NCBI GenBank assembly: GCA_002269645.1
Contig: NIVC01000600.1
Location: forward strand, 1 to 64,000
Reading direction: 5' to 3'
DNA: 64,000 bases
From: Macrostomum lignano
Taxonomy: Eukaryota
Part shown: piece by piece, positions 2,972-61,881 of the stretch
How positions within the stretch are numbered: position 1 is the first letter of the stretch
Layout: each line of letters opens with the position of its first letter
Translations under genes and position numbers: made by a program
The notes under the pieces: model-generated
Databases searched by the model: none
Told to the model about the DNA's origin: nothing
What the model saw: the letters and a program-made list of their open reading frames with translations, nothing else

Positions 2972-3495
2972 AGGCTAGATTAGCAATCCATTCTATTCCT
3001 GCATCCTCAATGATGTTGGCTAGATTAGCAATCCATTCTATTCCTGCATCCTCAATGATGTTGGCTAGATTAGCAATCCGTTCTATTCCTGCATCCTCAA
3101 TGATGTTGGCTAGATTAGCAATCCATTCTATTCCTGCATCCTCAATGATGTTGGCTAGATTAGCAATCCATTCTATTCCTGCATCCTCAATGATGTTGGC
3201 TAGATTAGCAATCCATTCTATTCCTGCATCACCAATGATGTTGGCTAGATTAGCAATCCATTGTATTCCTTCATCCTCAATGGTGTTGGCTAGATTAGCA
3301 ATCCATTCTATTCCTGCATCACCAATGATGTTGGCTAGATTAGCAATCCATTGTATTCCTTCATCCTCAATGGTGTTGGCTAGATTAGCAATCCATTCTA
3401 TTCCTGCATCACCAATGATGTTGGCTAGATTAGAAATCCATTGTATTCCTTCATCCTCAATGGTGTTGGCTAGATTAGCAATCCATTCTATTCTT
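2972..3495. repeat. 45-bp minisatellite, ~11-12 copies; same family as the 42-bp array at 40230-40876
   Basis: Unit GGCTAGATTAGCAATCCATTCTATTCCTGCATCCTCAATGATGTT; its reverse complement aligns with the 42-bp unit with one 3-nt indel. Confidence 0.95.
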
Positions 3496-6317: not shown

Positions 6318-7050
6318 GGGCTGAGAAGTAGGGCACGGGGTGGATGCGGTCTGAGAAGTAGGGCACGGGGTGGATGCGGTCTGAGAAGTAGGGCACGGGT
6401 GGATGCGGTCTGAGAAGTAGGTCACGGGGTGGATGCGGTCTGAGAAGTAGGGCACGGGGTGGATGCGGTCTGAGAAGTAGGGCACTGGGTGGATGCGGTC
6501 TGAGAAGTAGGGCACGGGGTGGATGCGGTCTGAGAAGTAGGTCACGGGGTGGATACGGTCTGAGAAGTAGTGCACGGGGTGGATGCGGTCTGAGAAGTAG
6601 GGCACGGGGTGGATGCGGTCTGAGAAGTAGTGCACGGGGTGGATGCGGTCTGAGAAGTAGGGCACGGGGTGGATGCGGTCTGAGAAGTAGGGCACGGGGT
6701 GGATGCGGTCTGAGAAGTAGGTCACGGGGTGGATGCGGTCTGAGAAGTAGGGCACGGGGTGGATGCGGTCTGAGAAGTAGGTCACGGGGTGGATGCGGTC
6801 TGAGAAGTAGGGCACGGGGTGGATGCGGTCTGAGAAGTAGGGCACGGGGTGGATGCGGTCTGAGAAGTAGGGCACGGGGTGGATGCGGTCTGAGAAGTAG
6901 GGCACGGGGTGGATACGGTCTGAGAAGTAGTGCACGGGGTGGATACGGTCTGAGAAGTAGGGCACGGGGTGGATGTGGTCTGAGAAGTAGGGCACGGGGT
7001 GGATGCGGTCTGAGAAGTAGGGCACGGGGTGGATGCGGTTCGAGAAGTAG
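6318..7050. repeat. 30-bp minisatellite (GAGAAGTAGGGCACGGGGTGGATGCGGTCT), ~24 copies
   Basis: Direct periodicity; ends ~35 nt from the exon-1 donor at 7086. Confidence 0.95.
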
Positions 7051-17151: not shown

Positions 17152-17472
17152 TTACACATGGCACGGCTCCATTTCATTGACGCTGAAAATGTTCAGCTTT
17201 TGGCGGAATTTTTCTCCCGGCCAGGCCGATCGAGTTTCACCCAGCCTGAAAGTCAGCATCAGGCACTGAACAAAGACGGCCGCGGCTGCTCCATTCAAGG
17301 CCAGCATCGCGTAAATCGACGCCCGCCACAGGCTGGCGAACGGCTTTGAAGTCACGTGACAGTTCTCGCGGCGAATCATGATGTCTAGCATGCGGCAGGA
17401 GATGGCGCCGACCGTTGCCGCGTACACGGCGAGGCCCGCTAGAGATAGCAGCACGAGGAAGGCCTTGTATGC
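17152..17472 (-). CDS. Orphan membrane protein, exon 2 (AYKAFLVLLSLAGLAVYAATVGAISC...SIYAMLALNGAAAAVFVQCLMLTF...EPCHV*)
   Basis: TTTGCAG acceptor ending at 17473, phase 0; two hydrophobic TM-length segments; GC-rich relative to flanks; no family recognised. Confidence 0.6.
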   Translation of the reverse strand, partial: AYKAFLVLLSLAGLAVYAATVGAISCRMLDIMIRRENCHVTSKPFASLWRASIYAMLALNGAAAAVFVQCLMLTFRLGETRSAWPGEKFRQKLNIFSVNEMEPCHV

Positions 17473-17724
17473 CTGCAAATTGTGAGCGTTAAAGACGGCA
17501 GTTGGTTGCTACGACTTTTCTAGTACTTTGTGGCCTCGGGTACAGGCTGCTTCTTGAACGCTTCTATAGATGCTTGTCTAGAATTAGTGTGGCCTCGTAC
17601 AACACGCATTAAGAGATTGTTCATTCTTTCATGACGTGGAAAGGTGTACCATGGTAGTTGTTCAATGTTGATTTATTATGTGTATCCCCATAATAATGCA
17701 AAACACCGGTGCCAGTGTACTTAC

Positions 17725-17832: not shown

Positions 17833-18519
17833 AGTTGGCAGGGGGCTGCTGATCCGATCACAGAAATGAACTAATGTTGCAATAATAAATGTTTTCCTAC
17901 TATATTATATCCAAAAAGCCCAATTCTCGTCTATGGTACGTGTCCTTAAAAGCAAAGTTACTTAGGAAACATATCGCTTTCGTGAATCAAGTTAAGAAGT
18001 TTAGAAGAAGCAAGAATTTTATGGCCTCAGCTATTCGATGGCTCCCTTGAATTGATTTTTTAAATCCTTAATTTGACTTCTCTAACGCGCAGAATTTTGT
18101 CTATGGCCAAGACTTTTTATGCAGCCAGAATACGATAGTTCTTTCTTAAATTGAATTCCTTAAATCTTAATTTGATTTACAAAAGCGATATTATACATAA
18201 GTAGCATTTTCCAGTCAATTTTATCCAGAGAGCAGTCAAATTAATCCTACTCGGATTCACACCAAAGACTACTCAAAAATTTTTTGAGTAGTCCTTGATT
18301 CACACTCGGATTCACAGAGCCACTGGGTTTTTAAGCTCAAAGCTTTTGTTCCGTTTCAGTCAGTTTATTCTTGAAAGCACCCAGTTTTGGTCAATGAGTT
18401 CTATAATTAGCATCTGGAGTGGAAACGTGAGCATGAGTGACTCGGAGAGCGGCGCAAGTTTCGCCGCTGCTGAGGAGGAACTGCACGAATGACGCCGTTT
18501 ATACGATAAAAATCTGCGA

Positions 18520-18810
18520 CGACAAGTACTTCTTGGTCATACGGGCGCTTGGAACGTGGGAAATGACTCAGTGGCTGAATGTGAAGATCCGGACAGTCTA
18601 CTCAATCAGAAGACGGTACGAGACAACTTGACGCCGAGATCTTGCACCAAAAGGCGGCAGACGTCACAAGAAGTTGTAGGATGAAGACGTGCAAGCGTTG
18701 CTTCCTCTTCTTGAAGATAACACTTTGCTGACCTATCGGCAGATGCAGCAAGAGCTACAATATCTCCATGGAGTTGAAGCTGGCACAAGCTTGCACTGAT
18801 GTTCCTATAA
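18520..18810 (+). pseudogene. Decayed IS630/Tc1-type transposase N-terminal fragment related to the element at 8711-9461
   Basis: DDKYFLVIRALGTWEMTQWLNVKIRTVYSIRRRYETT*RRDLAPKGGRRHKKL*DEDVQALLPLLEDNTLLTYRQMQQELQYLHGVE aligns by eye with the 9.0-9.3 kb fragment (LNVK..VYSI, LL.L.EMQQ.L); two in-frame stops. Confidence 0.7.
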
Positions 18811-19461
18811 TTCAAATGGCTTGTGCGAAATTGACTGCTTGTAGGGTCAAATCGATTGGACAGATAAACAACTTTGGCCATAGAACCCAGAGAAATTGAC
18901 TGGGCAATGCTATAATAGTATAACTTTTGCTAGCAAAACAGTGTTTTTCCATGTCCTACAAATAATTGTCGTTAAGTCAATCTGACAGTATTCCGCAGCC
19001 AGACCAATTCACGGCTTCCAGGTGTTTGATGTCGACGGTCTGGACATGGACATTTTCGAAGTGCCCAGGTTCAGAGCTTCAGAGCGGATCTCGGCGTGGT
19101 TGTGAAACTGAATCAGATTAATTGCATTCAAGAAAACTTGTTCTTAAAATGCGGAAACGAGTTCATTTTACAGTGTAATCGGTTGGCCCCTCTAGATTCC
19201 GCTGTATACGGTGCTGTTACATCCAGGAACGCAACACGCGGTTTGCGTTTCTGTTGCTGCCGCAGACGATCACAGTCGATTTTCTCTATTGTTACTAACT
19301 TTTTCAAGCTGCTGACAATAATCTTCGATGAAGGAAGGTATTTTGTAAAAAAACGTGAACAATTTGATAGAAGCAAACGGCTGAGTACATTGGCGTGCTA
19401 ATATAACAGAACAAATGGTCAATTTGGATCGAAGTTTATTTTAACTGTTAGTCTCAATCTA

Positions 19462-20097
19462 CACTCAGCAACATTTAAAAGTGCCCCCCAACCTTGCGCC
19501 AAGGGTTCATGGGCAGCACGATCGATGGTTTCGCCAATTGGTTTTGGGCCATAGACAAATGAGCAAAAAAAGGCACGAAAGTAAAGACCGATATCTGGTG
19601 TCACAGGGAAAAGCGTTACAGTAACGCGTGTACAGGAGTTAACTGGAGGCATCTGGACGCAGGTGACTGATGGCGTACTTTGCGTTGGCCGTCCAGACCA
19701 CCGGATATGAACCCGATTGAGCACGTGTGGGATTTCCTGAAGCGCACGATTAGTTGCAACAATCTCTATCCCCCCAGAACAGGGTCCAGCTGCGCAATGC
19801 GCTTTCAGTCGCGTGGCAACAGCTTCCACAAGACTTTCTGCGGCGCCTTTTTCGGGAATGCCTCGACGAGTAAGCGGTCTGTTGGACGCTCGCGGTTGTT
19901 ATCTATACCTGTTACTGACTGTGCTTTAGACACGTACACGGCGTGGAAATTGGCATGGACTTGTTTCGCTGTTCATTCTTTGTTGCCTTATTTTGATTGT
20001 CTATGGCCCAAACATAGTTAAAAACCTTTCAATCCCTAATCGTTCAGCTAGTGTAGCCTTTTGTGCAGACGTGGACACTTTTCAATGTTGCTGAGTG
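19462..20097 (+). mobile_element. Internally deleted Tc1 element retaining the C-terminal transposase segment
   Basis: TIRs CACTCAGCAACATT(T/G)AAAAGTG, TA flanks at 19460-19461 and 20098-20099; interior RWPSRPPDMNPIEHVWDFLKR, then frameshifted QLRNALSVAWQQLPQDFLRRL and MPRRV..LLDARG, matching the Tc1 WPxxSPDLNPIE signature. Confidence 0.92.
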
Positions 20098-22611: not shown

Positions 22612-22647
22612 TTTATTAGCCGAGCTGTTCTTGAAAATTAGTTTATT
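22612..22647 (-). terminator. Candidate polyadenylation signals (AATAAA x2) of the prohormone-like gene
   Basis: TTTATT on the plus strand at 22612-22617 and 22642-22647, ~130-165 nt past the stop codon. Confidence 0.5.
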
Positions 22648-22778: not shown

Positions 22779-23348
22779 TTAGGCGCGTTTGTAACGGTCG
22801 TTGTTCTCGAAGAACTTCTTGTAACGGTCGTTGTTCTCGAAGAACTTCTTGTAACGGTCGTTGTTCTCAAGAAATTTCTTGAAGCGGTCGTTGTTCTCGA
22901 AGAACTTCTTGAAGCGGTCGTTGTTCTCGAAGAACTTCTTGTAACGGTCGTTGTTCTCAAGAAATTTCTTGAAGCGGTCGTTGTTCTCGAAGAACTTCTT
23001 GAAGCGGTCGTTGTTCTCGAAGAACTTCTTGTAACGGTCATGCCTGTCTAGAAACTTTTTGAAGCGGTCGTTGGCGCCAAAGAACTTCTTGTAGCGGTCG
23101 TTAGCGCCAAAGAACTTCTTGTAGCGGTCGTTGGCTCCAAAGAACTTCTTGTAGCGGTCGTTGGCGCCAAAGAACTTCTTGAAACGGTCGCCGCCGAAGA
23201 ATCGCTTGTTGTCTTGGTGCTCATGGTGGGGGTGCTCAACAGCATGGGAGTCGCTGGGAGCGGCGTCTGCCATGACGGTAGCTGCCACGGTTAGTAGCAG
23301 AAGCCCGGAGGCCAGCAAGCGAATGGATCCGCAGCACGAAACCGGCAT
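22779..23348 (-). CDS. Secreted multi-copy peptide (neuropeptide-prohormone-like) precursor, 189 aa, with 14 KK/KR-flanked peptides of the FFGANDRY / FFENNDRF type
   Basis: ATG at 23348; hydrophobic signal-peptide-like N-terminus (MPVSCCGSIRLLASGLLLLTVAATVMA); His-rich spacer; KR, then 14 peptides separated by KK, ending KR-A-stop; upstream TATA and CCAAT boxes and downstream AATAAA signals. Confidence 0.88.
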   Translation of the reverse strand: MPVSCCGSIRLLASGLLLLTVAATVMADAAPSDSHAVEHPHHEHQDNKRFFGGDRFKKFFGANDRYKKFFGANDRYKKFFGANDRYKKFFGANDRFKKFLDRHDRYKKFFENNDRFKKFFENNDRFKKFLENNDRYKKFFENNDRFKKFFENNDRFKKFLENNDRYKKFFENNDRYKKFFENNDRYKRA

Positions 23349-23451: not shown

Positions 23452-23529
23452 TTATATAGACGCTATACCACCCCCCCCCCCCTAGTAACGTCCTCATCCC
23501 TACGCATGCCATTCTCACATTCCTATTGG
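23452..23529 (-). promoter_or_regulatory. Core promoter of the prohormone-like gene (TATATAA at 23458-23452, CCAAT at 23529-23525)
   Basis: Both motifs are on the minus strand, ~105 and ~180 nt upstream of the ATG, with a G11 tract between them. Confidence 0.6.
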
Positions 23530-36945: not shown

Positions 36946-37839
36946 CTCTTCTATCCATCACTTTCCTTTCCATTTTTAATTCCGTGTACTCCGTGTACTT
37001 TTGCATAGCATGTAAACACTTCAAGTTCGAGTATTTTTCCTCACAAAACTCACTGGAGTTGACGTTATAGCGGCTGTATTATGTGATTGCGAGTGGATGG
37101 GCAATCTTATAAATGATCTGGGATCACTAACCCGGGCCCCTGTGGATTAATAAAAAACTCTAGCCTAGCCTAGCCCATAATTTGACGTTGATGACTCCTC
37201 TGTCAGGCGCACGCGGCTGTGTACTTTTAGTTTGCGAGTCCTACACGGCCGGCCAGCAGATTAAGCGTGTAACAGAAGAAGCCACAGGGCCGCCTTGTCT
37301 CCTAGCTAAATTCTCCCAGGAACTATTTGTTTCCTGAGTCTCCCTCCCCGATATCCTCATGCCTGCGCTTCATCCTTAGCCGGATCTGATGGGATGCAAG
37401 CTGGATTGGCTTTTGACTGAGGCCTCGCCCTCCCTCAGCCCCTCCCCATCCGGCGGGTGGATAAATAGCGCGGGCCCAGCAACTCTCTCGCCAGCCGTAG
37501 GTCTACTATCGAACTCAGTAGCGCAGGACAGCCAGCCGGGCGGAGATTGAGGATCCAGGACTCGGTTCCGGACTTGGCAAGCGGAGCACGCGATATCGCT
37601 GCAAATCCTCCTGTGATTTTGTATACCTGTCCCTGTTCAGAGGCAAGTGCTTTTGGGGCTCCCAAATTTATGCGCTGGCCTGTTTCGAAATTCTACATCA
37701 TTTCCTCACCTTTTTACCGTTGTTGCAGCGCTGTCTTCCTGAGTTTTGCTTTTGATTCATTTTTTATATAAAAAAGGTGCGCATTTTGTGCGACTTTTGT
37801 CACGTCGTTTTGTCTGTCCATTCCTCTGCCTTTCCATGT

Positions 37840-39385
<1,546 letters not shown>

Positions 39386-40229
39386 TTCAGCTTTCTGTCT
39401 GTTTTATTCTGTCTTTCTGTGCCCACCAATCTCCGCCTATCCATTTGCGCAATGCCCACCCCACAAGTGGTGCCCGTCGGGCCGTTGCCGCCCAGTTGCC
39501 AGCGGCAGTGAACCCCACAATAACGCCAATTTCCCCAAAACTGCTGCGCGTTGTCCTGCAGGCCAGCGCCACTTGCCTGTCAGCCGGGCCGCCCGCAGAC
39601 CGCAGCCAGGGTATGTGCGCGCACCTGCCGAAGTGTTGCCGAGTACTTTTTATTTTCGTCTTAATGTATACATTGTCTTTCCATCCTTGTTTCTCCTTAA
39701 CTTTCCCTATTTAATGCATCACTGCTCATTGACATAGCAACTATTTTGTGTAGAATAAAAACTTTGTAGGTACACATGTAGTTCCTCATGAGGCTGTTTT
39801 GGTTTAGCTACTAGATTGGTGCACCAATATTCGTTATTTTTCCTTTAATTAACATTTATAGTCGTTAAAACTAACAAAAAGTCTGTAAAAAGTCTGTTGT
39901 AAAGCATGCGCGATGGTAGTTTTGGCACAAAATGTAAAATGACAGAATTAAAGAATTTAGTAGATTGTATACATGTGCTTAAACTTTGTGTAGACAGCTT
40001 GCACTATTTAAAATTGATTTGTTTGCACAGGTGACAGCGATTAGTTTCTTTGCGTTATAATTCAGTTTAAATTGGATTAGTTTGAATGCACTTTTATTGG
40101 TTAAAAGGTCTTCATTTTCTCTATTTACTGATGGGTTGCAGCAGTCTAGTAGAATTTGCATCATCATTCATTTTGTTTATAGTGAAAAAATGTGATTGCT
40201 GCTATGCTCTAGTAGACGTAGGGGCCAGA

Positions 40230-40876
40230 ATGGATTGCTAGTCTAGTCAACATCACGGATGCAGGAATAGAGTGGATTGCTAGTCTAGCCAACATCACGG
40301 ATGCAGGAATAGAGTGGATTGCTAGTCTAGTCAATAGCACGGATGCAGGAATAGAGTGGATTGCTAGTCTAGTCAATAGCACGGATGCAGGAATAGAGTG
40401 GATTGCTAATCTAGCCAATAGCACGGATGCAGGAATAGAGTGGATTGCTAGTCTAGTCAATAGCACGGATGCAGGAATAGAGTGGATTGCTAGTCTAGTC
40501 AATAGCACGGATGCAGGAATAGAGTGGATTGCTAGTCTAGTCAATAGCACGGATGCAGGAATAGAGTGGATTGCTAATCTAGTCAATAGCACGGATGCAG
40601 GAATAGAGTGGATTGCTAATCTAGTCAATAGCGCGGATGCAGGAATAGAGTGGATTGCTAGTCTAGTCAACATCACGGATGTAGGAATAGAGTGGATTGC
40701 TAGTCTAGTCAACATCAAGGATGCAGGAATAGAGTGGATTGCTAGTCTAGTCAATAGCACGGATGCAGGAATAGAGTGGATTGCTAGTCTTGTCAACATC
40801 ACGGATGCAGGAATAGAGTGGATTGCTAGTCTAGTCAACATCAAGGATGCAGGAATAGAGTGGATTGCTAGTCTAG
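40230..40876. repeat. 42-bp minisatellite, ~15 copies, abutting a 3' splice site; same family as 2972-3495
   Basis: Unit TGGATTGCTAGTCTAGTCAACATCACGGATGCAGGAATAGAG; ends ~19 nt before the acceptor AG at 40894-40895. Confidence 0.95.
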
Positions 40877-40895
40877 TTCACCGTTGCCCTCGCAG

Positions 40896-46814: not shown

Positions 46815-48185
46815 CCTTTCCTCTTCTCTCACCCTCCTCCCACACTCTCTTCTTCCTTACCCTCCTCTCCTATCACCCTCCTCTCCGTCCCTCACTCTCC
46901 TCTCCTTCCCTTACCCTCCTCTCCGTCCCTCACCCTCCTCTCCTTCCCTCACTCTCCTCTCCGTCGCTCACTCTCCTCTCCTTCCCTTACCCTCCTCTCC
47001 GTCCCTCACCCTCCTCTCCGTCCCTCACTCTCCTCTCCTTCCCTTACCCTCCTCTCCTCTCACCCTCCTCCCCACCACACTCTCTTCTTCCCTTACCCTC
47101 CTCTCCGTCCCTCACCCTCCTCTCCGTCCCTCACCCTCCTCTCCGTCCCTCACCCTCCTCTCCGTCCCTCACCCTCCTCTCCTTCCCTCACTCTCCTCTC
47201 CGTCCCTCACTCTCCTCTCCTTCCCTTACCCTCCTCTCCGTCCCTCACCCTCCTCTCCGTCCCTCACTCTCCTCTCCTTCCCTTACCCTCCTCTCCGTCC
47301 CTCACCCTCCTCTCCGTCCCTCACTCTCCTCTCCTTCCCTTACCCTCCTCTCCGTCCCTCACCCTCCTCTCCGTCCCTCACTCTCCTCTCCTTCCCTTAC
47401 CCTCCTCTCCTCTCACCCTCCTCCCCACCACACTCTCTTCTTCCTTACCCTCCTCTCCGTCCCTCACCCTCCTCTCCGTCCCTCACCCTCCTCTCCTTCC
47501 CTCACTCTCCTCTCCGTCCCTCACTCTCCTCTCCTTCCCTTACCCTCCTCTCCGTCCCTCACTCTCCTCTCCTTCCCTTACCCTCCTCTCCTCTCACCCT
47601 CCTCCCCACCACACTCTCTTCTTCCCTTACCCTCCTCTCCGTCCCTCACCCTCCTCTCCGTCCCTCACCCTCCTCTCCGTCCCTTACCCTCCTCTCCGTC
47701 CCTCACCCTCCTCTCCGTCCCTCACTCTCCTCTCCTTCCCTTACCCTCCTCTCCTCTCACCCTCCTCCCCACCACACTCTCTTCTTCCTTACCCTCCTCT
47801 CCGTCCCTCACCCTCCTCTCCGTCCCTCACCCTCCTCTCCGTCCCTCACTCTCCTCTCCTTCCCTTACCCTCCTCTCCTCTCACCCTCCTCCCCACCACA
47901 CTCTCTTCTTCCCTTACCCTCCTCTCCTATCACCCTCCTCTCCGTCCCTCACTCTCCTCTCCGTCCCTCACCCTCCTCTCCGTCCCTCACTCTCCTCTCC
48001 TTCCCTTACCCTCCTCTCCTCTCACCCTCCTCCCCACCACACTCTCTTCTTCCCTTACCCTCCTCTCCGTCCCTCACCCTCCTCTCCGTCCCTCACCCTC
48101 CTCTCCGTCCTCACTCTCCTCTCCTTCCCTTACCCTCCTCTCCTTCTCTCACCCTCCTCCTTCCCTCACCCTCCTCTCCGTCCCT
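46815..48185. repeat. CT-rich compound minisatellite (CCCTCCTCTCCGTCCCTCA-type units)
   Basis: Direct reading; explains the 500-aa Pro/Ser/Leu ORFs. Confidence 0.95.
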
Positions 48186-49464
48186 CAACCTCTTATGCTG
48201 CCATTTAGTATTACTCGAGATAATTGAAGTCTCGCAATGATTTATTGTTTCGAATGATGCGCTGAAACTAATCAAAATCATAATGGCTTAGAAATTTTTT
48301 CTTTAGACCAGTGTTCTCGATAAGCGAGTTATCTTAGTAGATTAATGATGTGCCTAATGCATGGGTGAGATAACGCGAATTTCAGCGTGAGATTGATACC
48401 CCCTGGTGTAGGAAATCAAGCAGAGTGATGATTCGCTGTGGTTCATTGAAGGTGATATTGTGTCACTGCATTTTGAATGGTTAGGTGGGTATATGAGGTG
48501 AGATTGACAGTTAGATAGGGATGAGACTGAGAATGAGATTGAGATTAATGAAAGTGATAGTGGGATGGGGGTGAGAATGAAAGGGGGATGAGGGTGAGAG
48601 TGAGATAGGGATGAGAGTTGAAGTGAGAGTGAAAGAGGGGTGAGAGTGGGAATGATGGGGATGAAAGTGAGTGATAGTGAGATATGGGTGAGAGTGAGTG
48701 AGATAGAGATGAGAGTGAGAGAGGGATGATAGTGAGAATGATGGGGATGAGAATGAGAGTGATGTGAGGTCATACTGAGCTCAAGCTAAAGTTGAGAATA
48801 AAGTAGTTCGTGAAACTTTATACAAGAGTAAGAAAAGTTTGAGTTCAATAAGCTGGTGACTTTGGTAGCGAGCCTTGACCCGTTATATTAGAGGAATTGT
48901 TGCATGCAAGCAAAAAGTGATGAAGCAACCGTGTTAAAGAAATGTCAGCATCCTCATTTGCTTTCATCTCCTACTCAAACAGGTTCAGTTCAGATAAAAA
49001 AGAAGTTGCACTCCTTTGTAACGCGCTGCCCCGGGATCTCATATGCCATTATATGCAATCTAAATCCCCCCGGGACCATCGATCTCTTTGTTAGCTCTGT
49101 CTGTCTGCCTGCTGCCGGAGCGCTGTAGTTTTAGCTGCAGCCTGCCCGGCTTACGGGGCTTGGCATCGAACTTCTAAGCTGGGACATTGCGAGTCCCGCT
49201 CCCTCCTATTTTTACCTTTTGCCTCCCTGGGATCAATGCGCGTACTGAAAGAGAGGGAGTAAGAGAGAGATTAGTCCGTAATGTATTGCAACTCGGGAAC
49301 TCTGATTCTGGGCTACTCTTAGCATTGCTACATTCTGCTCATATTGGGTGGGCATTGATTAATATGCTCCATCAACTAGCTTCGCTCTCCATGTTGGAAT
49401 CTCGATTGCCGATTCCAATGCTAAGTTTACCTGCCTAGTAACCCTTTGCCCACACCCCTTTGTA

Positions 49465-50265
49465 GTTTCATCTACTCTCCCCTCCTACTCCCCAGCATCT
49501 ACTCTCCCCCCCCCCTACTCCCCATCATCTACTCTCCCCCCTACTCCCCATCATCTACTCTCCCCCCCCTACTCCCCATCATCTACTCTCCCCCCTACTC
49601 CCCATCATCTACTCTCCCCCCCCTACTCCCCATCATCTACTCTCCCCCCTACTCCCCATCATCTACTCTCCCCTCCTGCTCCCCATCATCTACTCTCCCC
49701 TCCTACTCCCCATCATCTACTCTCCTCTCCTACTCCATCATCTACTCTCCCCTCCTACTCTCCATCATCTACTCTCCCCTTGTACTCTCCATCATCTACT
49801 CTCCCCTCCTGCTCCCCATCATCTACTCTCCCCTTGTACTCTCCATCATCTACTCTCCCCTCCTACTCCATCATCTACTCTCCCCTCCTACTCTCCATCA
49901 TCTACTCTCCCCTTGTACTCTCCATCATCTACTCTCCCCTCCTACTCCTCATCATCTACTCTCCCCTCCTACTCCTCATCATCTACTCTCCCCTCCTACT
50001 CCCCATCATCTACTCTCCCCTTGTACTCCCCATCATCTACTCTCCCATTGTACTCCCCATCATCTACTCTCCCCTCCTACTCCCCCATCATCTGCTCTCC
50101 CCTCCTACTCCCCATCATCTACTCTCCCCTCCTGCTCTCCATCATCTACTCTCCCCTCCTACTCCCCCATCATCTGCTCTCCCCTCCTACTCCCCATCAT
50201 CTGCTCTCCCCTCCTACTCCCCCATCATCTGCTCTCCCCTCCTACTCCCCATCATCTACTCTCCG
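49465..50265. repeat. ~27-bp CT-rich minisatellite (CTACTCTCCCCTCCTACTCCCCATCAT)
   Basis: Direct reading. Confidence 0.93.
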
Positions 50266-51039
50266 TCTACTGCCTTGGAATTTGCAAGTCAGGGCACAGT
50301 TTACCAAAAAGATCAAAGCTTATCATTATCTAACAGTGCACTGTATCCCTACACTGGACAGGCCGGCTTTGGGATGTCAGTCACGCTCCGCTGCCAGCTT
50401 AAATCTGATTTGGGTTCGGGCTTTGGGGATTCGGAATCTGCAAATTTTAGGAGGGAGGATCTGCCTAGGTGGATGGAAGCTGGCTGGCTTGATGCGATGA
50501 AGCATTAGACTCCGTGGCTCTTGCCAGCCAGCAGCAGCAGCTGGTTCTGTTTCTGGCATCAGCAGCAGCAGCAGACATTGTTTTAACTGAGATTTTACTA
50601 TTTGCCTGCGAAGGACAGCAGGGCGACCACTGGCCGATGCATATTCATGCAAACACTGCACCCTTGTCCGAACCTTATCCATCCTGAACTGCACTGTATA
50701 GTCATGCCCGCTGCCGCCAGGCTCCTCTATCCCCCCTCTCCCTCTCATCCCATCCATCCCGTCTCTCTCTGTTGCTACTTCCGTTTTTATCGTTTTCGTA
50801 TTTTCGCAGGTGCTCAGCTCTCTGCTGCTCTTGCATCTGTGTTATTCCCTTCACTCCCAACCCCCCTGTAGCTTTTATCGCTTTGGGTGTTTGTTCAGCT
50901 GCGCTCGGAGTATTGCTTATCTGCCCTCATCTGTCTTGCTTACTGTTATAAGTATTATCACTTTCGCTTGGTTCTAATGTGTTCATTCACATGTCTTCAC
51001 CTTTTTACCCGCTCTCCTGCCTGCTTGTCCTTGTGCCTC

Positions 51040-52584
51040 TCGCTTATCTCTATCTCCCTTTCACACTCCTATCTCTCTCCTGCTCCCTTATCTCTCCCTC
51101 CCACTCCCTTATCTCTCTCTCCTGCTCCCTTATCTCTCCCTCCCACTCCCTTATCTCTCTCTCCTGCTCCCTTATCTCTCCCACCCACTCCCTTATCTCT
51201 CTCTCCTGCTCCCTTATCTCTCCCTCCCACTCCCCCATCTCTCTCTCCTGCTCACTTATCTCTCCCTCCCACTCCCTTATCTCTCTCTCCTGCTCCCTTA
51301 TCTCTCCCACCCACTCCCTTATCTCTCTCTCCTGCTACCTTATCTCTCCCTCCCACTCCCTTATCTCTCTCTCTCTCTCTCTCTCACGCTCCCTTATCTC
51401 TCCCTCCCACTCCCCCATCTCTCTTTCTCGCTCCCTTATCTCTCCCTCCCACCCCCCATCTCTCTTTCTCGCTCCCTTATCTCTCTTTCCGCTCTCTTAT
51501 ATCTCTCCCCACTCCCTTATCTCTCTCTCCTGCTCCCTTATCTCTCCCACCCACTCCCTTATCTCTCCCTCCCACTCCCCCATCTCTCTTTCCCGCTACC
51601 TTATCTCTCTTTCCCGCTCTCTTATATCTCTCTCCCACTCCCTTATCTCTGCCTCCCACTCCTTTATCTCTCCCTCCCACTCCCTTATCTCTCTTTCCCA
51701 CTTCCTTCTCTCTTTCCCGCTCCCTTATCCCTCTCCCGCTCCCTTTTCTCTCCATCACTCTCCCATATCTGTCTCTCACTCTCCCATATCTCTCTCTCCC
51801 ACTCCCTTATCTCTCCCTCACTCTCCCTTATTTGTCTCTCATTCTCCCATATCTGTCTCTCATTCTCCCTTATCTGTCTCATTCTCCCATATCTGTCTCT
51901 CATTCTTCCATATCTGTCTCTCACTCTCCCATATCTCTCTCTCCCACTCCCTTATCTCTCCCTCACTCTCCCTTATTTGTCTCTCATTCTCCCATATCTG
52001 TCTCTCATTCTCCCTTATCTGTCTCATTCTCCCATATCTGTCTCTCATTCTTCCATATCTGTCTCTCACTCTCCCATATCTCTCTCTCTCCCACTCCCTT
52101 ATCTCTCCCTCACTCTCCCTTATTTGTCTCTCATTCTCCCATATCTGTCTCTCATTCTCCCTTATCTGTCTCATTCTCCCATATCTGTCTCTCATTCTTC
52201 CATATCTGTCTCTCACTCTCCCATATCTCTCTCTCCCACTCCCTTATCTCTCCCTCACTCTCCCTTATTTGTCTCTCATTCTCCCATATCTGTCTCTCAT
52301 TCTCCCTTATCTGTCTCTCATTCTCCCATATCTGTCTCTCATTCTCCCGTATCTGTCTCTCATTCTCCCTTATCTCCCTCCTATCTTTCTTTCGACCTAT
52401 TTTTTCTTTCTTTTCTTTCTCACTCTTCCTTTTTCTCCCTGTCTATTTCTCTCACTCTTCCTTCATCTGCCGCTCCCCCTCTCTCTCTCTCGCCTTTTTC
52501 CCCTGTTGCATCAGTTGCTATGTGCCACTTCCTGTTTTATGCTATTCCAGTGTTTCCTGTATTTTACCTATCTTATTTTCTGGT

Positions 52585-52635
<51 letters not shown>

Positions 52636-52645
52636 CCTCTCTCCT

Positions 52646-52712
<67 letters not shown>
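51040..52712. repeat. CT-rich compound satellite ending in (CT)n
   Basis: Direct reading. Confidence 0.93.
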
Positions 52713-52717
<5 letters not shown>

Positions 52718-53229
52718 TGTGAGAGTCGAGTCGAACTATTATTTTAAAACAATATTGTAGTGTCTGTCCCAAGTTCCGTTTTTAAGTGTTTTAACTAAGG
52801 CATCTTAAAGTACATTTGCACCGTTATTCGAGCGGCGGCCAATCAGTTTTGCTTGAAGTCGTCGCAGCGGCCATTGGCTGGTCTCCCGTCTCTCCGGTGC
52901 TGCAGTTCCCTGTCTAGGGAGGGCGGATTTTTTATTCCCAAACCCTGCAGTGACAAGCGGCAAGCCTGTCTGCCAGAGGCTTTTTGGGAAAACTCGACCT
53001 GCCACTTCCAATTCCCAGCTGTTCTCAAAAATGTTCTCGGTGAGATTTTTGGCTTATTTTCTGTCGGTTTCGTACTCGCTTCTCATGTCCTCTTCGATCG
53101 GTTCGTGCCAGCTTAATAATGCGGGCTGTCAAATGGCTGCTGAGATTTGTCCGCCTCATCTTTGACCTCCCTGAATACTGACTACCATTGTTCCTCTGTT
53201 CTGCCTCTGCTGTGGCTGCCGAAGTATCT

Positions 53230-55040
53230 CCCTGCCTCTATCTACCTCTCTGCCTGCCTCTCTGCCTGCCTCTCTCCCTGTCTCTCTCTGCCTCTCTGCC
53301 TGCCTCTCTGCCTGCCTCTCTGCCTGCCTCTCTCCCTGCCTCTCTCCCTGCCTCTCTCCCTGCCTCTCTCCCTGCCTCTATCTACCTCTCTGCCTGCCTC
53401 TCTGCCTGCCTCTCTGCCTGCCTCTATCTGCCTCTCTGCCTGCCTCTCTGCCTGCCTCTCTGCCTGCCTCTCTGTCTGCCTCTCTCCCTGCCTCTCTCCC
53501 TGCCTCTCTCCCTGCCTCTCTCCCTGCCTCTCTCTGCCTCTCTCTCTGCCTCTCTCCCTGCCTCTCTCCCTGCCTCTCTCCCTGCCTCTCTCCCTACCTC
53601 TCCCTGCCTCTCTCCCTGCCTCTATCTGCCTCTCTGCCTGCCTCTCTGCCTGCCTCTATCTGCCTCTCCCTGCCTCTCTCTGCCTCTCTCTGCCTCTCTC
53701 TGCCTCTCTCTCTCTGCCTCTCTCCCTGCCTCTCTCCCTGCCTCTCTCCCTGCCTCTCTCCCTGCCTCTCTCCCTACCTCTCCCTGCCTCTCTCCCTGCC
53801 TCTATCTGCCTCTCTGCCTGCCTCTCTGCTTGCCTCTATCTGCCTCTCCCTGCCTCTCTCCCTGCCTCTCTCCCTACCTCTCCCTGCCTCTCTCCCTACC
53901 TATCTCTGCCTCTCTGCCTGCCTCTCTGCCTGCCTCTCTCTGCCTCTCTCCCTGTCTCTCTGCCTCTCTCCCTGTCTCTCTCTGCCTCTCTCCCTGCCTC
54001 TCTCCCTGTCTCTCTCTGCCTCTCTCCCTGCCTCTCTCCCTGTCTCTCTCTGCCTCTCTCCCTGCCTCTCTCCCTGTCTCTCTCTGCCTCTCTCCTTGCC
54101 TCTCTCTGCCTCTCTCCCTGCCTCTCTCTGCCTCTCTCCCTGCCTCTCTCCCTGTCTCTCTCTGCCTCTCTCCCTGCCTCTCTCTGCCTCTCTCCCTGCC
54201 TCTCTCCCTGCTTCTCCCTGCCTCTCTCCCTGCCTCTCCCTGCCTCTCTACGTGCCTCTCTCTCTGCCTCTCCCTGCCTCTCTGCGTGCCTCTCTCCCTG
54301 CCTCTCTCCCTGTCTCTCCCTGCCTCTCCCTGCCTCTATCTGCCTCTCCCCCTGCCTCTCCCTGCCTATCTCCCTTCCTCTCTCCCTGCCTCTCCCTGCC
54401 TCTCCCTGCCTCTCCCTGCCTCTCCCTGCCTCTCTCTGCCTCTCTCCCTGTCTCTCTCTGCCTCTCTCTGCCTCTCTCCCTGTCTCTCTCTGCCTCTCTC
54501 CCTGTCTCTCTCTGCCTCTCTCCCTGCCTCTCTCCCTGCCTCTCCCTGTCTCTCTCTGCCTCTCTCCCTGCCTCTCTCCCTGTCTCTCTCTGCCTCTCTC
54601 CCTGCCTCTCTCTGCCTCTCTGCCTGCCTCTCTGTCTGCCTCTCTCCCTGCCTCTCTCCCTGCCTCTCTCCCTGCCTCTCTCCCTGCCTCTCTCCCTGCC
54701 TCTCTCTGCCTCTCTCTCTGCCTCTCTCCCTGCCTCTCTCCCTGCCTCTCTCCCTGCCTCTCTCCCTACCTCTCCCTGCCTCTCTCCCTGCCTCTATCTG
54801 CCTCTCTGCCTGCCTCTCTGCCTGCCTCTATCTGCCTCTCCCTGCCTCTCTCTGCCTCTCTCTGCCTCTCTCTGCCTCTCTCTCTCTGCCTCTCTCCCTG
54901 CCTCTCTCTGCCTCTCTCCCTCCCTCTCTCCCTGCCTCTCTCCCTCCCTCTCTCTGCCTCTCTCCCTCCCTCTCTCTGCCTCTCTCCCTGCCTCTCCCCC
55001 TCCCTCTCTCTCTGCCTCTCTCACTCAATCTCTCCCTCTC
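53230..55040. repeat. TGCCTCTCTCCC-type satellite (~12-bp units)
   Basis: Direct reading; explains the ~680-aa Leu/Ser/Pro/Cys ORFs. Confidence 0.95.
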
Positions 55041-55959
55041 ACCCCTCATTCACCCTCTCTCTCTCCCTTTCTCACTTCTTCTTTATCCTCTCCATACTTC
55101 TCTCTTTTTCACTCTCTATTTTGCTTTTTCTCCTCAAGCCACTCGTATTCCTTCGCTTGCTCAATCGCATTCCCTTTTTAACTTAGTCTGTCTGTTGCGG
55201 GTCAGTGTTGGCAATGCTGCCGAGGTCTAATCAGCCAGAGTGCTGCTTAAATATAGATGAGCTGCAGAGAGGACAGCAAATTTTTAACTTGTTGTTCTTT
55301 GTCCACTTTGTTCGCTTTCCTTGCGCAACCCAATTGCTTTGTTTTCTTGTCCGATATCTCTCACCGCCCGCATCTGTTCTGGAGGCTGTTCAATCATTGA
55401 ATCGCTATCCGCTCTTCGTCGCCACCTAACGGCAAAACTGCGAATGAGTGATTGTGCTGTGAGGCTGGCTGGGCTGACTTGACTAACCTGAGCACCAGTT
55501 GTTGAGTTATGAATTATGAATTTCAAATTTTCGCTCTGTCAGTTTGTTGATGCTGTCTTCTGGTCTGATTTTCTCGTTGCTTCGAATTAATAGTTAATAC
55601 GACGTAGTTTGAGCGCCTTCTCCACACCGCTCTCAAAGCTGGATTGCGTATCCGGAATCCCGGATGCTTAAGTGGGCCTGCAGGATATTGCCGCCCCACC
55701 TGAGTCCTTCCTGTGCGACTTCCTGGGGCTGCTGTGTTGTATCCCGAGTGTTGATTCACCCTGTCCCCTTCTCTCTTTCTCTCTTCTAAGTCTTTCTAGT
55801 GGCTTGCGTGACGAAATGTGCGAATTTCCAAAACGGATTCAGGCCTTCGACTCGAATTTTCACCCTAACAATATGCCACTCACTCATTTTCCATTGCGGA
55901 GTTATCCCGTCCGACAGTTTTTATTGCGCATTAAATAAGTAGTTTGAGCAGTATATCAG

Positions 55960-56045
55960 CATGGCTACATGGGCTGGTAGCGAAGATGCACACGAACAGG
56001 TTGATAAAGGCACCATGCTCAAGCAGGCTTTCACCCGCCACTTCA
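55960..56045 (+). CDS. Probable exon of the PDZ-PH-RhoGAP gene (x-WLHGLVAKMHTNRLIKAPCSSRLSPATS), possibly PH strand 1
   Basis: ATCAG acceptor and GTGAGT donor; phase 1 to 0 is compatible with exons 43289-43419 and 59024-59317; WLH resembles the EGWLH start of the ARHGAP21 PH domain (weak). Confidence 0.5.
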
Positions 56046-56850
56046 GTGAGTAGCATTGATAGATGTAGGGATGCATTCAGTGCTAGCATTGATAGATGTA
56101 GGGATGCATTCAGTGCTAGCATTGATAGATGTAGGGATGCATTCAGTGCTAGCATTGATAGATGTAGGGATGCATTCAGTGAGTAGCATTGATGGATGTA
56201 GGGATGCATTCAGTGAGTAGCATTGATAGATGTAGGGATGCATTCAGTGAGTAGCATTGATGGATGTAGGGATGCATTCAGTGAGTAGCATTGATAGATG
56301 TAGGGATGCATTCAGTGAGTAGCATTGATAGATGTAGGGATGCATTCAGTGAGTAGCATTGGTAGATGTAGGGATGCATTCAGTGCTAGCATTGATAGAT
56401 GTAGGGATGCATTCAGTGCTAGCATTGATAGATGTAGGGATGCATTCAGTGCTAGCATTGATGGATGTAGGGATGCATTCAGTGCTAGCATTGATAGATG
56501 TAGGGATGCATTCAGTGAGTAGCATTGATAGATGTAGGGATGCATTCAGTGAGTAGCATTGATAGATGTAGGGATGCATTCAGTGAGTAGCATTGATAGA
56601 TGTAGGGATGCATTCAGTGAGTAGCATTGATAGATGTAGGGATTCATTCAGTGCTAGCATTGATAGATGTAGGGATGCATTCAGTGAGTAGCATTGATAG
56701 ATGTAGGGATGCATTCAGTGAGTAGCATTGATAGATGTAGGGATGCATTCAGTGAGTAGCATTGATAGATGTAGGGATGCATTCAGTGCTAGCATTGATA
56801 GTTGTAGGGATGCATTCAGTGCTAGCATTGATAGATGTAGGGATGCATTC
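56042..56850. repeat. 33/34-bp minisatellite whose unit contains the exon/intron junction TTCA|GTGAGT, ~24 copies
   Basis: Unit TTCAGTG(AG/C)TAGCATTGATAGATGTAGGGATGCA; about 14 units keep GTGAGT. Confidence 0.95.
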
Positions 56851-58014
56851 ATACGAACTGTATCAAGAGTTACTACTAGTGTAAGTAATGCATTCAGAGT
56901 ATGCGCTTTCATTTCATTTTCGTAATTCCCCTAGCCCCATCTTCATCAGTAATTTTTTGTATCTGAATATGCATTTGTCAGGAGACAGTGCATATGAATA
57001 TCAGGAATGCAGAGAAGCGAATGCTGGGGCTCTGTGCAATATATTCGTTTGGTTATAAAGTGTAACGATGGGCTATACAGATAATAGGGAATAATTTATC
57101 CTCATCTGGTTTCCAACTGCCTCCTGTTTTGTTGGTGCTTCCCGCCTTTCCCTGCGTCTCTCCTCTGGCCTCCTCTTCTCTGCCTCCGCCATCTTTTACC
57201 TCCCCCCCTAGCTATCCGCTTCGAGTGCTCTGTTGCATGCAGGCCAATGCAGTGTTGCCCTGTGTTAAAATACGCTCTCCTGCCTTCCTTTTAGTGCATT
57301 TTATTTTCTAAGAAAGCCAGATTTTAAACTGCGGTAGGTGGCCCTCCGGTAGGGGTCGTATACTTATTGAACCCTATGTACTCTCTCTCTCTGCATACAC
57401 ATTGGCGTACATCGCAAAGTGGACGGAACAGGGAGCTGAGAGGGGTCGGCAGCAACGGTCGCTTCCATGATGACGAACCCAGCGGCTGTGGCTTCTACCG
57501 CCCCCTCCCCCCAGCGAATGTGATGCGTCTTTGCTTGATCGGAAATCCCCTATTTATCTATCCCCACGCCGCCTGTCTGTTATCCCATCTGATCTGATCG
57601 GTCTCAGCAGCTCTCTCTGATTCGAAGTGTGTCCGGCCGGGCCATGCATATATAGGATATATATATATAGAGGGGGGCTGAACGTCAGCCGAGGGAAATG
57701 ATATGGCGAGATTAGCCGCAAAGTCTGCCGAGATTTGAAAATCTCCCGCGTGCCTTTCTCCCCTCTCTCTCTGCTTCCCCCTCCCCTATTCTGGCCTTCA
57801 AGCCAAAACAACTCTTCCGGATTTTGCATGGCAACTGCCTGCCTATAGGGGGGGGGGGTCTGAAATCTGAACTGCGGTCGGGGCGCTGGCATGCCATTGG
57901 AGAAATAGCTAAGAATAATAATGATAATTACGAGTGCCGCATGTATTGCATCTCAGCAATACATGAGTGAGCCAACTCTCAGTGTGCCTGTGTTCGGTAA
58001 TCATGGTTGCAACT

Positions 58015-58420: not shown

Positions 58421-58639
58421 GTGGGCTCTGGGGTCAGTGCTTGGGGTGGGTTATTTGTCTGGTGAGGGTTTGCGTAATCTGTGTACATCGTTGCTCATTC
58501 TCTATTCCATTGTTCATGCCTTATCTCTGTCACCCACCCCAATGCTATGCTGCGATGCTTATTAAATGTGTTTCTGATCTAAGGTTAACTTCAAAAAATT
58601 TTTGTAACAACTTGAGAGCTAAAGCTATTGACTTTCAGT

Positions 58640-58985: not shown

Positions 58986-59023
58986 CGACAAAATAGGCTC
59001 CCCCCCTTGCATTCCGTTTCTAG

Positions 59024-59317: not shown

Positions 59318-59337
59318 GTGAGCCGCACTCGGGTGGA

Positions 59338-61880: not shown

Positions 61881-61881
61881 T

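What the first reader, a model, noticed from the sequence alone, without database searches (positions are those of the whole stretch)
22779..23348. Unrecognised multi-copy, non-amidated FF-x-R-F/Y peptide prohormone
Seen in sequence: an intronless 189-aa ORF with a signal-peptide-like N-terminus, a His-rich spacer and 14 peptides bounded by KK or KR: FFGGDRF x1, FFGANDRY x3, FFGANDRF x1, FLDRHDRY x1, FFENNDRF x4, FLENNDRY x2, FFENNDRY x2. It also has TATA, CCAAT and AATAAA signals. Established knowledge: signal peptide plus dibasic-flanked paracopies is the architecture cut by PC1/3 and PC2 convertases and carboxypeptidase E, and amidation by PAM needs a C-terminal Gly. No copy has that Gly, so these would be RF-OH/RY-OH free acids rather than RFamides or RYamides. 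Inference: a new or lineage-specific neuropeptide family. Aromatic ends around a polar or acidic core loosely recall non-amidated pedal peptide/orcokinin peptides, but the FDxI-like core is missing. An uncleaved secreted repeat protein is the alternative.
Basis: partly seen in the sequence, partly recalled or inferred. Interest (0 to 1): 0.88.

Follow-up and report, generated by a model that had tools for sequence, protein, structure and literature searches.

The report
Unannotated flatworm multi-copy peptide precursor gene
An unannotated, intronless gene in the flatworm Macrostomum lignano most likely encodes a secreted precursor that is cut into 14 short non-amidated peptides; this is a lineage-specific example of a well-known kind of neuropeptide-like gene, with expression and processing still unproven.

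Summary
On the minus strand, 23348 to 22779, a 189-aa ORF encodes a signal-peptide-like N-terminus, a His-rich acidic spacer and 14 peptides of 7-8 aa. Every peptide is flanked by KK or KR, and none has an amidation Gly.

The window is Macrostomum lignano. 30.6% of it is tandem repeat, so an open frame in a minisatellite proves little here. Other evidence supports a real coding gene:
- Variation among the units falls on third codon positions (8/10 against 6/20, p=0.013).
- F1, D6, R7, K9 and K10 are invariant in protein despite synonymous changes.
- GC3 is 0.79 against flanks of 0.38-0.49, the strongest coding signal in 27 kb.
- TATA, CCAAT and two AATAAA motifs sit in the expected places.

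No homologue exists in 5.8 billion proteins or 1.84 billion representatives, no Pfam family matches, and no paper contains the peptide strings.

The best reading is a lineage-specific multi-copy peptide prohormone cut by PC2 and a carboxypeptidase into free-acid peptides. The kind is not new: planarian 1020HH-2 yields MS-confirmed non-amidated -GGIRY peptides cut at KK, and acoels have species-specific non-amidated multi-copy peptides. Expression, cell type and processing could not be tested. It is a new member of a known kind, of moderate interest.

The parts
22779..23348 (-). Complete intronless CDS, 189 aa plus TAA stop (stop = 22779-22781)
   Evidence: GC3 is 0.79 against flanks of 0.38-0.49. 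It has the largest GC3 excess of any ORF of 50 codons or more in 8.5-36 kb.
23268..23348 (-). Predicted signal peptide, aa 1-27 (MPVSCCGSIR / LLASGLLLLTVAATV / MA). Likely cleavage is VMA|DA by the -3/-1 rule.
   Evidence: The sequence shows an n-region with Arg10, a 15-residue uncharged h-region, and Val at -3 and Ala at -1. A crude hydrophobicity and -3/-1 screen passes it. Only 4 of 121 ATG-ORFs of 60 aa or more pass, and the other 3 are CT-rich minisatellite frames. SignalP was not available, so the cleavage site is inferred.
23208..23267 (-). Acidic, His-rich spacer peptide DAAPSDSHAVEHPHHEHQDN (aa 28-47)
   Evidence: pI 5.1, charge -4.8. It is unique, non-repetitive sequence with GC3 of 0.67 over the N-terminal 49 codons.
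23202..23207 (-). First dibasic site, KR (aa 48-49), immediately before the first peptide copy
22785..23201 (-). Array of 14 paracopies (aa 50-188): F-[FL]-x(2-3)-D-R-[FY] followed by KK (13 times) or KR (last)
   Evidence: Variable nucleotide columns by codon position are 3/3/8 (Fisher p=0.013). F1, D6, R7, K9 and K10 are invariant, with synonymous TTC/TTT, CGT/CGC and AAG/AAA variation.
22845..23024 (-). Two nucleotide-identical 90-nt blocks (FFENNDRF-KK-FFENNDRF-KK-FLENNDRY-KK, twice): a recent block duplication inside the array
   Evidence: period 90, 4.4 copies; units 7-9 identical to units 10-12
23453..23458 (-). TATA-box-like TATATA(A), 110 nt upstream of the ATG, with no intervening ATG
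   Evidence: Chance expectation is 0.065 per 100 nt.
23525..23529 (-). CCAAT motif, about 70 nt upstream of the TATA
   Evidence: Chance expectation is 0.077 per 100 nt. This is weak evidence on its own.
22612..22647 (-). Two AATAAA polyadenylation-signal hexamers (22642-22647 and 22612-22617), 132 and 162 nt after the stop
   Evidence: Chance expectation is 0.068 per 100 nt each.

Best explanation
This is a real but unannotated single-exon gene of Macrostomum lignano. It encodes a preprohormone of the multi-copy peptide (MCP, neuropeptide-like) type.

Proposed mechanism:
1. The 27-residue signal peptide takes the protein into the ER and is removed, probably at VMA|DA.
2. In the regulated secretory pathway a prohormone convertase cuts after each of the 15 KK/KR sites. 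The likely enzyme is PC2, and M. lignano has a neural PC2 homologue whose knock-down is lethal. Internal and last sites have Arg at P4 (R-[FY]-K-K, R-Y-K-R), which favours convertases.
3. A carboxypeptidase E/D-type enzyme trims the basic residues.
4. The products are 14 peptides of 7-8 residues in 7 sequence variants, consensus F-[FL]-x2-3-D-R-[FY], with free carboxyl ends because no Gly donor for PAM is present. A 20-aa acidic His-rich spacer peptide is also released.
5. The peptides are released as intercellular signals, most likely from neurons or neurosecretory cells, and act on an unidentified receptor.

Shown here: the ORF and its architecture, coding constraint in this frame, gene-like composition and signals, and the absence of homologues.

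Inferred: the signal-peptide cleavage site, cleavage at KK/KR, the free-acid ends, neuronal expression and a signalling role.
For: Architecture. A signal-like N-terminus, a spacer and 14 paracopies, each flanked on both sides by dibasic sites, with the stop one residue after the last KR.

Coding constraint. Variable columns among units number 3/3/8 for codon positions 1/2/3, p=0.013. The framework residues F1, D6, R7, K9 and K10 never change in protein while their codons vary synonymously. Amino-acid change is confined to core positions 3-5 and to the conservative F/L and F/Y swaps. The only length change is one whole codon. Six of seven other in-frame minisatellites in the window show no such bias.

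Composition. GC3 is 0.79, and 0.67 in the unique N-terminal part. Flanks are 0.38-0.49 GC, and the annotated RhoGAP gene in the same window has GC3 of 0.80. This ORF has the top GC3 excess in 27 kb.

Signals. TATA at -110, CCAAT, and two AATAAA after the stop.

Structure. AF2 finds no confident fold (pLDDT 52, pTM 0.22), as expected for a precursor rather than a domain protein.

Processing machinery and precedent.
- The M. lignano PC2 homologue RNA815_2403.2 is nervous-system specific and essential (PMC4490696).
- Planarian 1020HH-2 is cut at KR and KK into MS-confirmed non-amidated -RY peptides (PMC2953531).
- Species-specific non-amidated MCPs with aromatic ends are common in survey data (PMC6188537).
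Against: - There is no evidence of transcription. The protein is absent from both public M. lignano protein sets and from every searched collection.
- No orthologue or paralogue was available, so conservation between species or copies could not be tested.
- The window is 30.6% minisatellite, so open repeat frames are common background.
- The codon-position test rests on only 14 variable columns and 11 distinct units that are related by duplication. One control array also gave a nominal p=0.01.
- KK is the least efficiently used convertase site type.
- If uncleaved, the mature protein would be a strongly cationic (pI 9.9, +17), Phe/Lys-rich decapeptide repeat. Such a protein could function intact.
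- The signal peptide was judged with a crude screen, not SignalP.
Confidence: 0.55

Rival explanations
1. This is a processed peptide precursor, but not a neuronal one. The same signal-peptide and dibasic processing would take place in a gland, epidermal or reproductive secretory cell (prostate or seminal fluid, cement or shell gland, adhesive organ, rhabdite cell). The released peptides would be exported as antimicrobial, pheromonal, seminal-fluid or defensive agents rather than acting as internal neuromodulators.
For: - All the architectural and coding-constraint evidence applies equally.
- Planarian prohormone genes are also expressed outside the CNS, for example mpl-2 in marginal adhesive glands and others in pharynx, intestine and sub-epidermal cells (PMC2953531).
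- The complete lack of homologues and the recent block duplication fit fast-evolving secreted or reproductive genes.
Against: - The peptides are short (7-8 aa) and neutral to acidic (charge -0.2 to -1.2), which is unlike cationic antimicrobial peptides.
- Many near-identical short paracopies is the typical neuropeptide pattern.
- No expression data exist either way.
Confidence: 0.17
2. This is an uncleaved secreted repeat protein. After signal-peptide removal the roughly 20.6 kDa product would stay intact and act as a material or binding protein. The product is a strongly cationic, Phe/Lys/Asn/Asp-rich decapeptide repeat. It could be a cation-pi-rich adhesive or coacervate component, or an egg-shell or mucus constituent. 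On this reading the KK pairs are structural, not cleavage sites.
For: - The mature protein has pI 9.9 and charge +17, with 19% Phe, 17% Lys and 5% Tyr, in a regular 10-residue period.
- AF2 draws short helices, one per unit, at low confidence.
- Decapeptide Lys/aromatic repeats are known from marine adhesive proteins (from memory, not tested here).
- KK is a relatively poor convertase site.
Against: - Every peptide is flanked on both sides, so there are 15 dibasic sites for 14 units.
- The two terminal sites are KR, which keeps the dibasic character through multi-nucleotide change (AAG to CGC).
- The last site is a full R-x-K-R convertase consensus one residue before the stop.
- There is no Cys, no Gly- or Tyr-rich cross-linking composition, and no confident fold.
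- KK is demonstrably cleaved in a flatworm prohormone (Smed-1020HH-2).
Confidence: 0.13
3. This is not a functional gene. A 30-nt minisatellite happens to be open in one frame and happens to abut a hydrophobic ATG-initiated stretch. On this reading it is an accident of a very repeat-rich genome, or a dead or never-expressed proto-gene.
For: - 30.6% of the window is tandem repeat, and many arrays have open frames of 160-680 codons.
- The gene is absent from both annotated M. lignano proteomes and from all protein collections.
- A second minus-strand frame is nearly open across the array.
- One control array also reaches nominal significance in the codon-phase test.
Against: - Third-position excess of variation falls in exactly the frame defined beforehand by the ATG and signal peptide.
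- GC3 is 0.79 in an AT-richer neighbourhood, and 0.67 in the non-repetitive N-terminal part.
- Only one frame has no stop across the array.
- The array is more diverged (84-88% matches) than typical neutral arrays here (90-98%), yet it has only a whole-codon indel.
- TATA, CCAAT and two AATAAA motifs are in the right places.
Confidence: 0.12

Closest known systems
Lineage-specific multi-copy peptide (MCP) or neuropeptide-like precursors. Examples are the acoel LWDY, AWDF, MRF and SSxxxF peptides (Thiel et al. 2018, PMC6188537) and, from memory, the nematode NLP precursors such as the nlp-21 GGARAF peptides.
   Same: Signal peptide followed by many short paracopies between dibasic sites. The peptides are non-amidated, often with aromatic C-termini. 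They are restricted to one species or clade and have no detectable homologues elsewhere. They are found by pattern, not by homology.
   Different: There is no sequence relationship. The F-[FL]-x-x-x-D-R-[FY] motif was not found in any paper or any protein database.
Planarian 1020HH prohormones (Smed-1020HH-2; Schistosoma npp-27), Collins et al. 2010, PMC2953531
   Same: These are flatworm prohormones. Their peptides end in a non-amidated -R-Y. Cleavage at both KR and KK was confirmed by mass spectrometry: KR-QSYLTGGIRY-KK-QVPG-KR-YLTGGIRY.
   Different: 1020HH has two copies, not 14. Its core motif is LTGGIRY, not FFxxxDR[FY]. There was no similarity in the searches, and the Smed supplement contains no 'DRY' or 'NDR' string.
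Luqin / RYamide family (arthropod RYamides with the FxxxRY-NH2 motif; spiralian WRPQGRF-NH2), Yanez-Guerra and Elphick 2020, PMC7041311
   Same: An aromatic residue a few positions before a C-terminal R-Y or R-F. The first copy, FFGGDRF, fits FxxxR[FY].
   Different: There is no amidation Gly. Thirteen of 14 copies have four residues, not three, between F and R. There are 14 copies instead of 1-2. The precursor has no C-terminal Cys-x10-Cys motif, and the only Cys residues are in the signal peptide. Flatworm luqins keep WRPQ...RFamide. This is a resemblance only.
Pedal peptide / orcokinin family (Smed-ppp-1 and ppp-2; crustacean orcokinin NFDEIDRSGFGFN, recalled from memory)
   Same: Multi-copy, non-amidated peptides with an aromatic residue near the N-terminus followed by acidic residues. 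Orcokinin also contains a D-R pair.
   Different: Flatworm ppp-1 copies are [FY]YDPIGGGLL, 10-13 aa long. The FDxI/YDPI core and the Gly-rich tail are absent here, and these peptides are only 7-8 aa.
EFLGamide (TRH-like) precursors. These were the only genuine neuropeptide precursors among the phmmer hits (P0055, P0068, P0084).
   Same: A period of 10-11 residues with KK(R) spacers and Phe-containing short copies. That is why phmmer aligned them, at E of about 1e-5.
   Different: Their copies are [FY]SEFLGG with an amidation Gly. There is no shared motif beyond KK and F. The match reflects periodicity and composition, not homology.

Membership tests
Multi-copy peptide prohormone (architecture class) | N-terminal signal peptide | tested here: met
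   The n-region, 15-residue h-region and V-x-A cleavage motif pass a crude screen that only 4 of 121 ATG-ORFs pass. SignalP was not available, so this is a heuristic test.
Multi-copy peptide prohormone (architecture class) | Repeated short peptides, each bounded by mono- or dibasic convertase sites | tested here: met
   14 copies and 15 KK/KR sites. K9 and K10 are invariant, with only synonymous or K-to-R change.
Multi-copy peptide prohormone (architecture class) | Processing enzymes present in the organism | tested here: met
   From the literature only. The M. lignano PC2 homologue RNA815_2403.2 is neural and its RNAi is lethal (PMC4490696). Carboxypeptidase E was not checked.
Multi-copy peptide prohormone (architecture class) | Transcribed in neurons or endocrine cells; mature peptides detectable | not testable with these tools
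   No transcriptome, in situ, single-cell or peptidomic data were reachable. The protein is absent from all protein collections.
Luqin / RYamide | C-terminal RYamide, RFamide or RWamide (Gly amidation donor before the cleavage site) | tested here: not met
   All 14 copies end in R-[FY] directly followed by KK or KR, with no Gly.
Luqin / RYamide | Precursor C-terminal region with two Cys about 10 residues apart; 1-2 peptides next to the signal peptide | tested here: not met
   There is no Cys after residue 6, the precursor has 14 copies, and it ends KR-A-stop. Family definition is from PMC7041311.
FMRFamide-like / flatworm FaRPs (YIRFamide, GNFFRFamide type) | C-terminal RFamide generated from an RFG-dibasic sequence | tested here: not met
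   There is no Gly after RF or RY. Smed spp-11 encodes YIRFG for comparison.
Pedal peptide / orcokinin | [FY]-D-x-I core with a Gly-rich C-terminal half, 10-15 aa, non-amidated | tested here: not met
   Only the non-amidated character is shared. The copies are 7-8 aa and lack the FDxI/YDPI core and the GGGLL or GFGF tail.
1020HH family | [YL]-L-T-G-G-I-R-Y motif | tested here: not met
   The motif is absent. Only the free -RY end and the KK cleavage context are shared.
Any Pfam or sequence family | Significant sequence similarity | tested here: not met
   - Pfam: nothing above cut-off, best E=0.027 at 14.6 bits against a cut-off of 27.
- Word-indexed search of 5.8 billion proteins: none.
- Exhaustive phmmer of 1.84 billion representatives: only low-complexity 10-residue-period artefacts.

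The most novel reading that the evidence does not exclude
The gene founds a Macrostomum-restricted family of free-acid FF-x3-DR[F/Y] neuropeptides, with its own still unknown receptor. It has been missed by both genome annotations, probably because its repetitive, intronless structure is hard to assemble and annotate. Its copy number would be evolving by recent block duplication. That would make it a tractable case of de novo or very fast neuropeptide-family birth in a genetically manipulable flatworm.
Probability: 0.4. Interest if true: 0.5.

Novelty: new member of a known kind. Interest (0 to 1): 0.38.

Why it matters
If the gene is expressed and processed, it adds an unannotated peptide-signalling gene to M. 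lignano. This is a transgenic and RNAi model flatworm, and I found no openly searchable published peptidome for it.

It would also show that repeat-rich, single-exon prohormone genes escape transcript-based annotation in this genome. Other such genes may therefore be hidden among its minisatellites.

The seven closely related free-acid peptides are cheap to synthesise, and their masses are predicted here. Receptor deorphanisation and behavioural or RNAi tests are therefore direct.

It does not change the general picture. Lineage-specific, non-amidated multi-copy peptides are a known and frequent outcome of neuropeptide surveys.

Tried and rejected
- Homology. A word-indexed search, an exact-sequence look-up, Pfam and an exhaustive phmmer search found nothing real. 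Twenty-nine of the 93 phmmer hits were read. All were unrelated 10-residue-period repeat proteins, apart from EFLGamide precursors that matched through KK and periodicity.
- Literature. The peptide strings occur in no paper. No M. lignano neuropeptide catalogue could be found or read. McVeigh 2009 (PMC2749192) is not held.
- Structure. The AF2 single-sequence model has low confidence, so no fold search was run because it would be meaningless.
- Paralogue within the window. None was found.
- Fetching the sister copy on NIVC01000052.1. The contig region reached through the RhoGAP gene (L001) stops about 27 kb short. No called gene lies near the target. The best neighbouring ORF (17155-17508) has no database match. 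This used the last protein search without result.
- Rfam. No RNA family was found in the window.
- Luqin/RYamide, pedal peptide/orcokinin, FaRP and 1020HH membership. Each was rejected because defining features are not met (see Membership tests).

Full report
WHAT IS THERE. The ATG is at 23348 and the TAA stop ends at 22779, giving 189 aa. The protein reads MPVSCCGSIRLLASGLLLLTVAATVMA | DAAPSDSHAVEHPHHEHQDN | KR, followed by 14 short peptides. The peptides are FFGGDRF, FFGANDRY x3, FFGANDRF, FLDRHDRY, FFENNDRF x4, FLENNDRY x2 and FFENNDRY x2. They are separated by KK, the last is followed by KR-Ala-stop, and none has a Gly before the basic pair. At DNA level this is a 30-nt tandem array with 13.4 copies and 84% matches. 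It also has a 90-nt higher-order period, and units 7-9 and 10-12 are nucleotide-identical.

ORGANISM AND CONTEXT. A RhoGAP ORF at 61882-63045 is 100% identical to Macrostomum lignano BOX15_Mlig031060g1. The public contig carrying that gene is NIVC01000052.1 in GCA_002269645.1. It is only 89-98% identical to window 50.1-64 kb. The window is therefore a paralogous or homeologous copy, or comes from another assembly. The window is extremely repeat-rich. 30.6% of it is tandem repeat, and many arrays have periods divisible by three and open frames of hundreds of codons. This matters because an ORF in a repeat is the background state here and does not by itself indicate a gene. Between 8.5 and 36 kb I found no other convincing coding sequence, only a decayed Tc1/mariner element at about 18.4-20.0 kb.

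IS IT A REAL CODING SEQUENCE? Four independent lines say it probably is.

(a) Pattern of variation among the 14 units. Of the 14 variable nucleotide columns, 8 are third codon positions (8 of 10) and 6 are first or second positions (6 of 20). Fisher one-sided p is 0.013, in the frame fixed beforehand by the ATG. F1, D6, R7, K9 and K10 are invariant in protein although their codons vary (TTC/TTT, CGT/CGC, AAG/AAA). Amino-acid change is confined to core positions 3-5 and to the conservative F/L and F/Y swaps. The only indel is one whole codon. Of seven other in-frame minisatellites used as controls, six show no phase bias. One reaches a nominal p=0.01 before correction for choosing the phase. 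The test is therefore supportive but not overwhelming.

(b) Composition. GC3 is 0.79, and 0.67 in the unique N-terminal 49 codons. The flanks are 0.38-0.49 GC, and the RhoGAP gene has GC3 of 0.80. The ORF has the largest GC3 excess of all ORFs of 50 codons or more in 27 kb.

(c) The N-terminus is unique sequence with a classical n/h/c signal-peptide layout. A crude screen passes 4 of 121 ATG-ORFs, and the other three are CT-rich repeat frames.

(d) Gene signals lie on the correct strand at sensible distances. TATATA is at -110 with no upstream ATG. CCAAT is about 70 nt further upstream. Two AATAAA hexamers lie 132 and 162 nt after the stop. Each is expected about 0.07 times per 100 nt by chance.

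HOMOLOGY. There is none. The word-indexed search of 5.8 billion proteins, the exact-sequence look-up and Pfam were all negative. The exhaustive phmmer search of 1.84 billion representatives returned 93 hits. The 29 I read were unrelated proteins with 10-residue low-complexity repeats, for example SNNDRVSPAT, LFVNNNGRYAQ and FQDISRYFKI. The only true neuropeptide precursors among them were EFLGamide-type (KKRFSEFLGG repeats). These matched through KK spacing and period, and they carry the amidation Gly that this gene lacks. The gene is therefore unannotated in both public M. lignano protein sets. The peptide strings occur in no paper held in the library. AF2 gives no confident fold, with pLDDT 52 and pTM 0.22.

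MECHANISM (best explanation, confidence 0.55). This is a preprohormone of the multi-copy-peptide kind.
- The signal peptide is removed, probably after Ala27.
- A prohormone convertase cuts after each KK or KR. Internal sites and the last site have Arg at P4, and the last site is a full R-x-K-R.
- A carboxypeptidase trims the basic residues.
- 14 free-acid peptides in 7 variants and an acidic His-rich spacer are released. No amidation is possible without Gly.

The machinery and precedent exist in flatworms. M. lignano has a nervous-system-specific, essential PC2 homologue (PMC4490696). Planarian 1020HH-2 (KR-QSYLTGGIRY-KK-QVPG-KR-YLTGGIRY) yields mass-spectrometry-confirmed non-amidated -RY peptides, showing that KK is used (PMC2953531). 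The architecture, the constraint and the lack of homologues are shown. Cleavage, free-acid ends, neuronal expression and signalling are inferred.

RIVALS.
(1) The same processing occurs in a non-neuronal secretory cell, giving exported bioactive peptides (0.17). Planarian prohormones are also expressed in glands, pharynx and gut.
(2) An uncleaved cationic Phe/Lys-rich decapeptide-repeat protein, with pI 9.9 and charge +17 (0.13). Against this, every peptide is flanked on both sides, KR is retained at both ends of the array, and KK cleavage is documented in a flatworm.
(3) A non-functional minisatellite ORF (0.12). The repeat-rich background and the absence from annotations favour it. The codon-phase, GC3 and signal evidence count against it.

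COMPARISON WITH KNOWN FAMILIES. The closest in kind are lineage-specific multi-copy peptide precursors. The acoel LWDY, AWDF, MRF and SSxxxF peptides are non-amidated, have aromatic ends, and are clade- or species-restricted (PMC6188537). The closest flatworm precedent for free -RY ends and KK cleavage is 1020HH. The motif loosely recalls arthropod RYamides (FxxxRY-NH2, luqin family; PMC7041311), but the defining features fail. There is no Gly, there is no C-terminal Cys pair, there are 14 copies rather than 1-2, and the spacing is wrong in 13 of 14 copies. Membership of pedal peptide/orcokinin, FaRP and EFLGamide families also fails (see Membership tests). It works like a neuropeptide-like precursor but belongs to no described sequence family.

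VERDICT. This is most likely a genuine, unannotated, Macrostomum-restricted multi-copy peptide precursor. It is a new member of a known kind, not a new kind. Non-amidated aromatic-ended peptides are not unusual in flatworms, so the original interest score of 0.88 is too high, and I score it 0.38. The decisive missing data are transcript evidence, the sister and orthologous copies, cell-type expression and peptidomics. None of these could be reached with the tools available.

Noticed in passing
window 50109-64000 vs L001 (NIVC01000052.1:728751-749641, GCA_002269645.1): The window is Macrostomum lignano. It is only 89-98% identical, with indels in repeats, to the public contig that carries the identical RhoGAP protein. 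It is therefore a paralogous or homeologous copy, or comes from a different assembly. A sister copy of the peptide gene should exist on that contig but could not be fetched.
   Followed up: partly
whole window; e.g. 910-1653, 6321-7050, 37839-39420, 46855-48192, 51072-52380, 53227-55037: 30.6% of the window is tandem repeat, in about 45 arrays. Many give long spurious ORFs in several frames. This is a major source of false 'genes' in this genome.
   Followed up: yes
2973-3493 and 40227-40877: The same minisatellite family lies at two places about 37 kb apart, in opposite orientation. Its units are 45 and 42 nt, and its frames read ...LARLAIHSIPAS... and ...IANLANIIEDAGIEW....
   Followed up: no
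18437-20021 (+): A decayed Tc1/mariner-type transposon remnant. A DDE_3 fragment (PDMNPIEHVWDFLKR) lies at 19680-20021 with E=0.002, and a weak HTH_23-like stretch lies at 18437-18628.
   Followed up: partly
61355-63045 (+): A RhoGAP-domain gene (Pfam E=1e-37) is identical to BOX15_Mlig031060g1. An overlapping upstream ORF at 61355-62029 in another frame, and the two differing public models (296 aa and 383 aa), suggest the annotated 5' end is incomplete or that there is an intron or frameshift.
   Followed up: no
56042-56851 (window) vs L001 3830-4908: TRF reports a 336-nt-period repeat here. It aligns to the sister contig at many offsets about 33-34 nt apart. This indicates a nested short-period array whose length differs between the two copies.
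   Followed up: no
17155-17508 (-): A 118-codon open frame has GC3 of 0.70 and hydrophobic segments that look like a signal or transmembrane region (MQAYKAFLVLLSLAGLAVYA...). It has no Pfam hit and no database homologue. It may be another unannotated small gene or may be chance.
   Followed up: partly
database proteins P0055, P0068, P0084 (not in the window): These are unnamed EFLGamide-type (TRH-like) neuropeptide precursors with KKR[FY]SEFLGG repeats. They surfaced as periodicity matches in the phmmer search.
   Followed up: no
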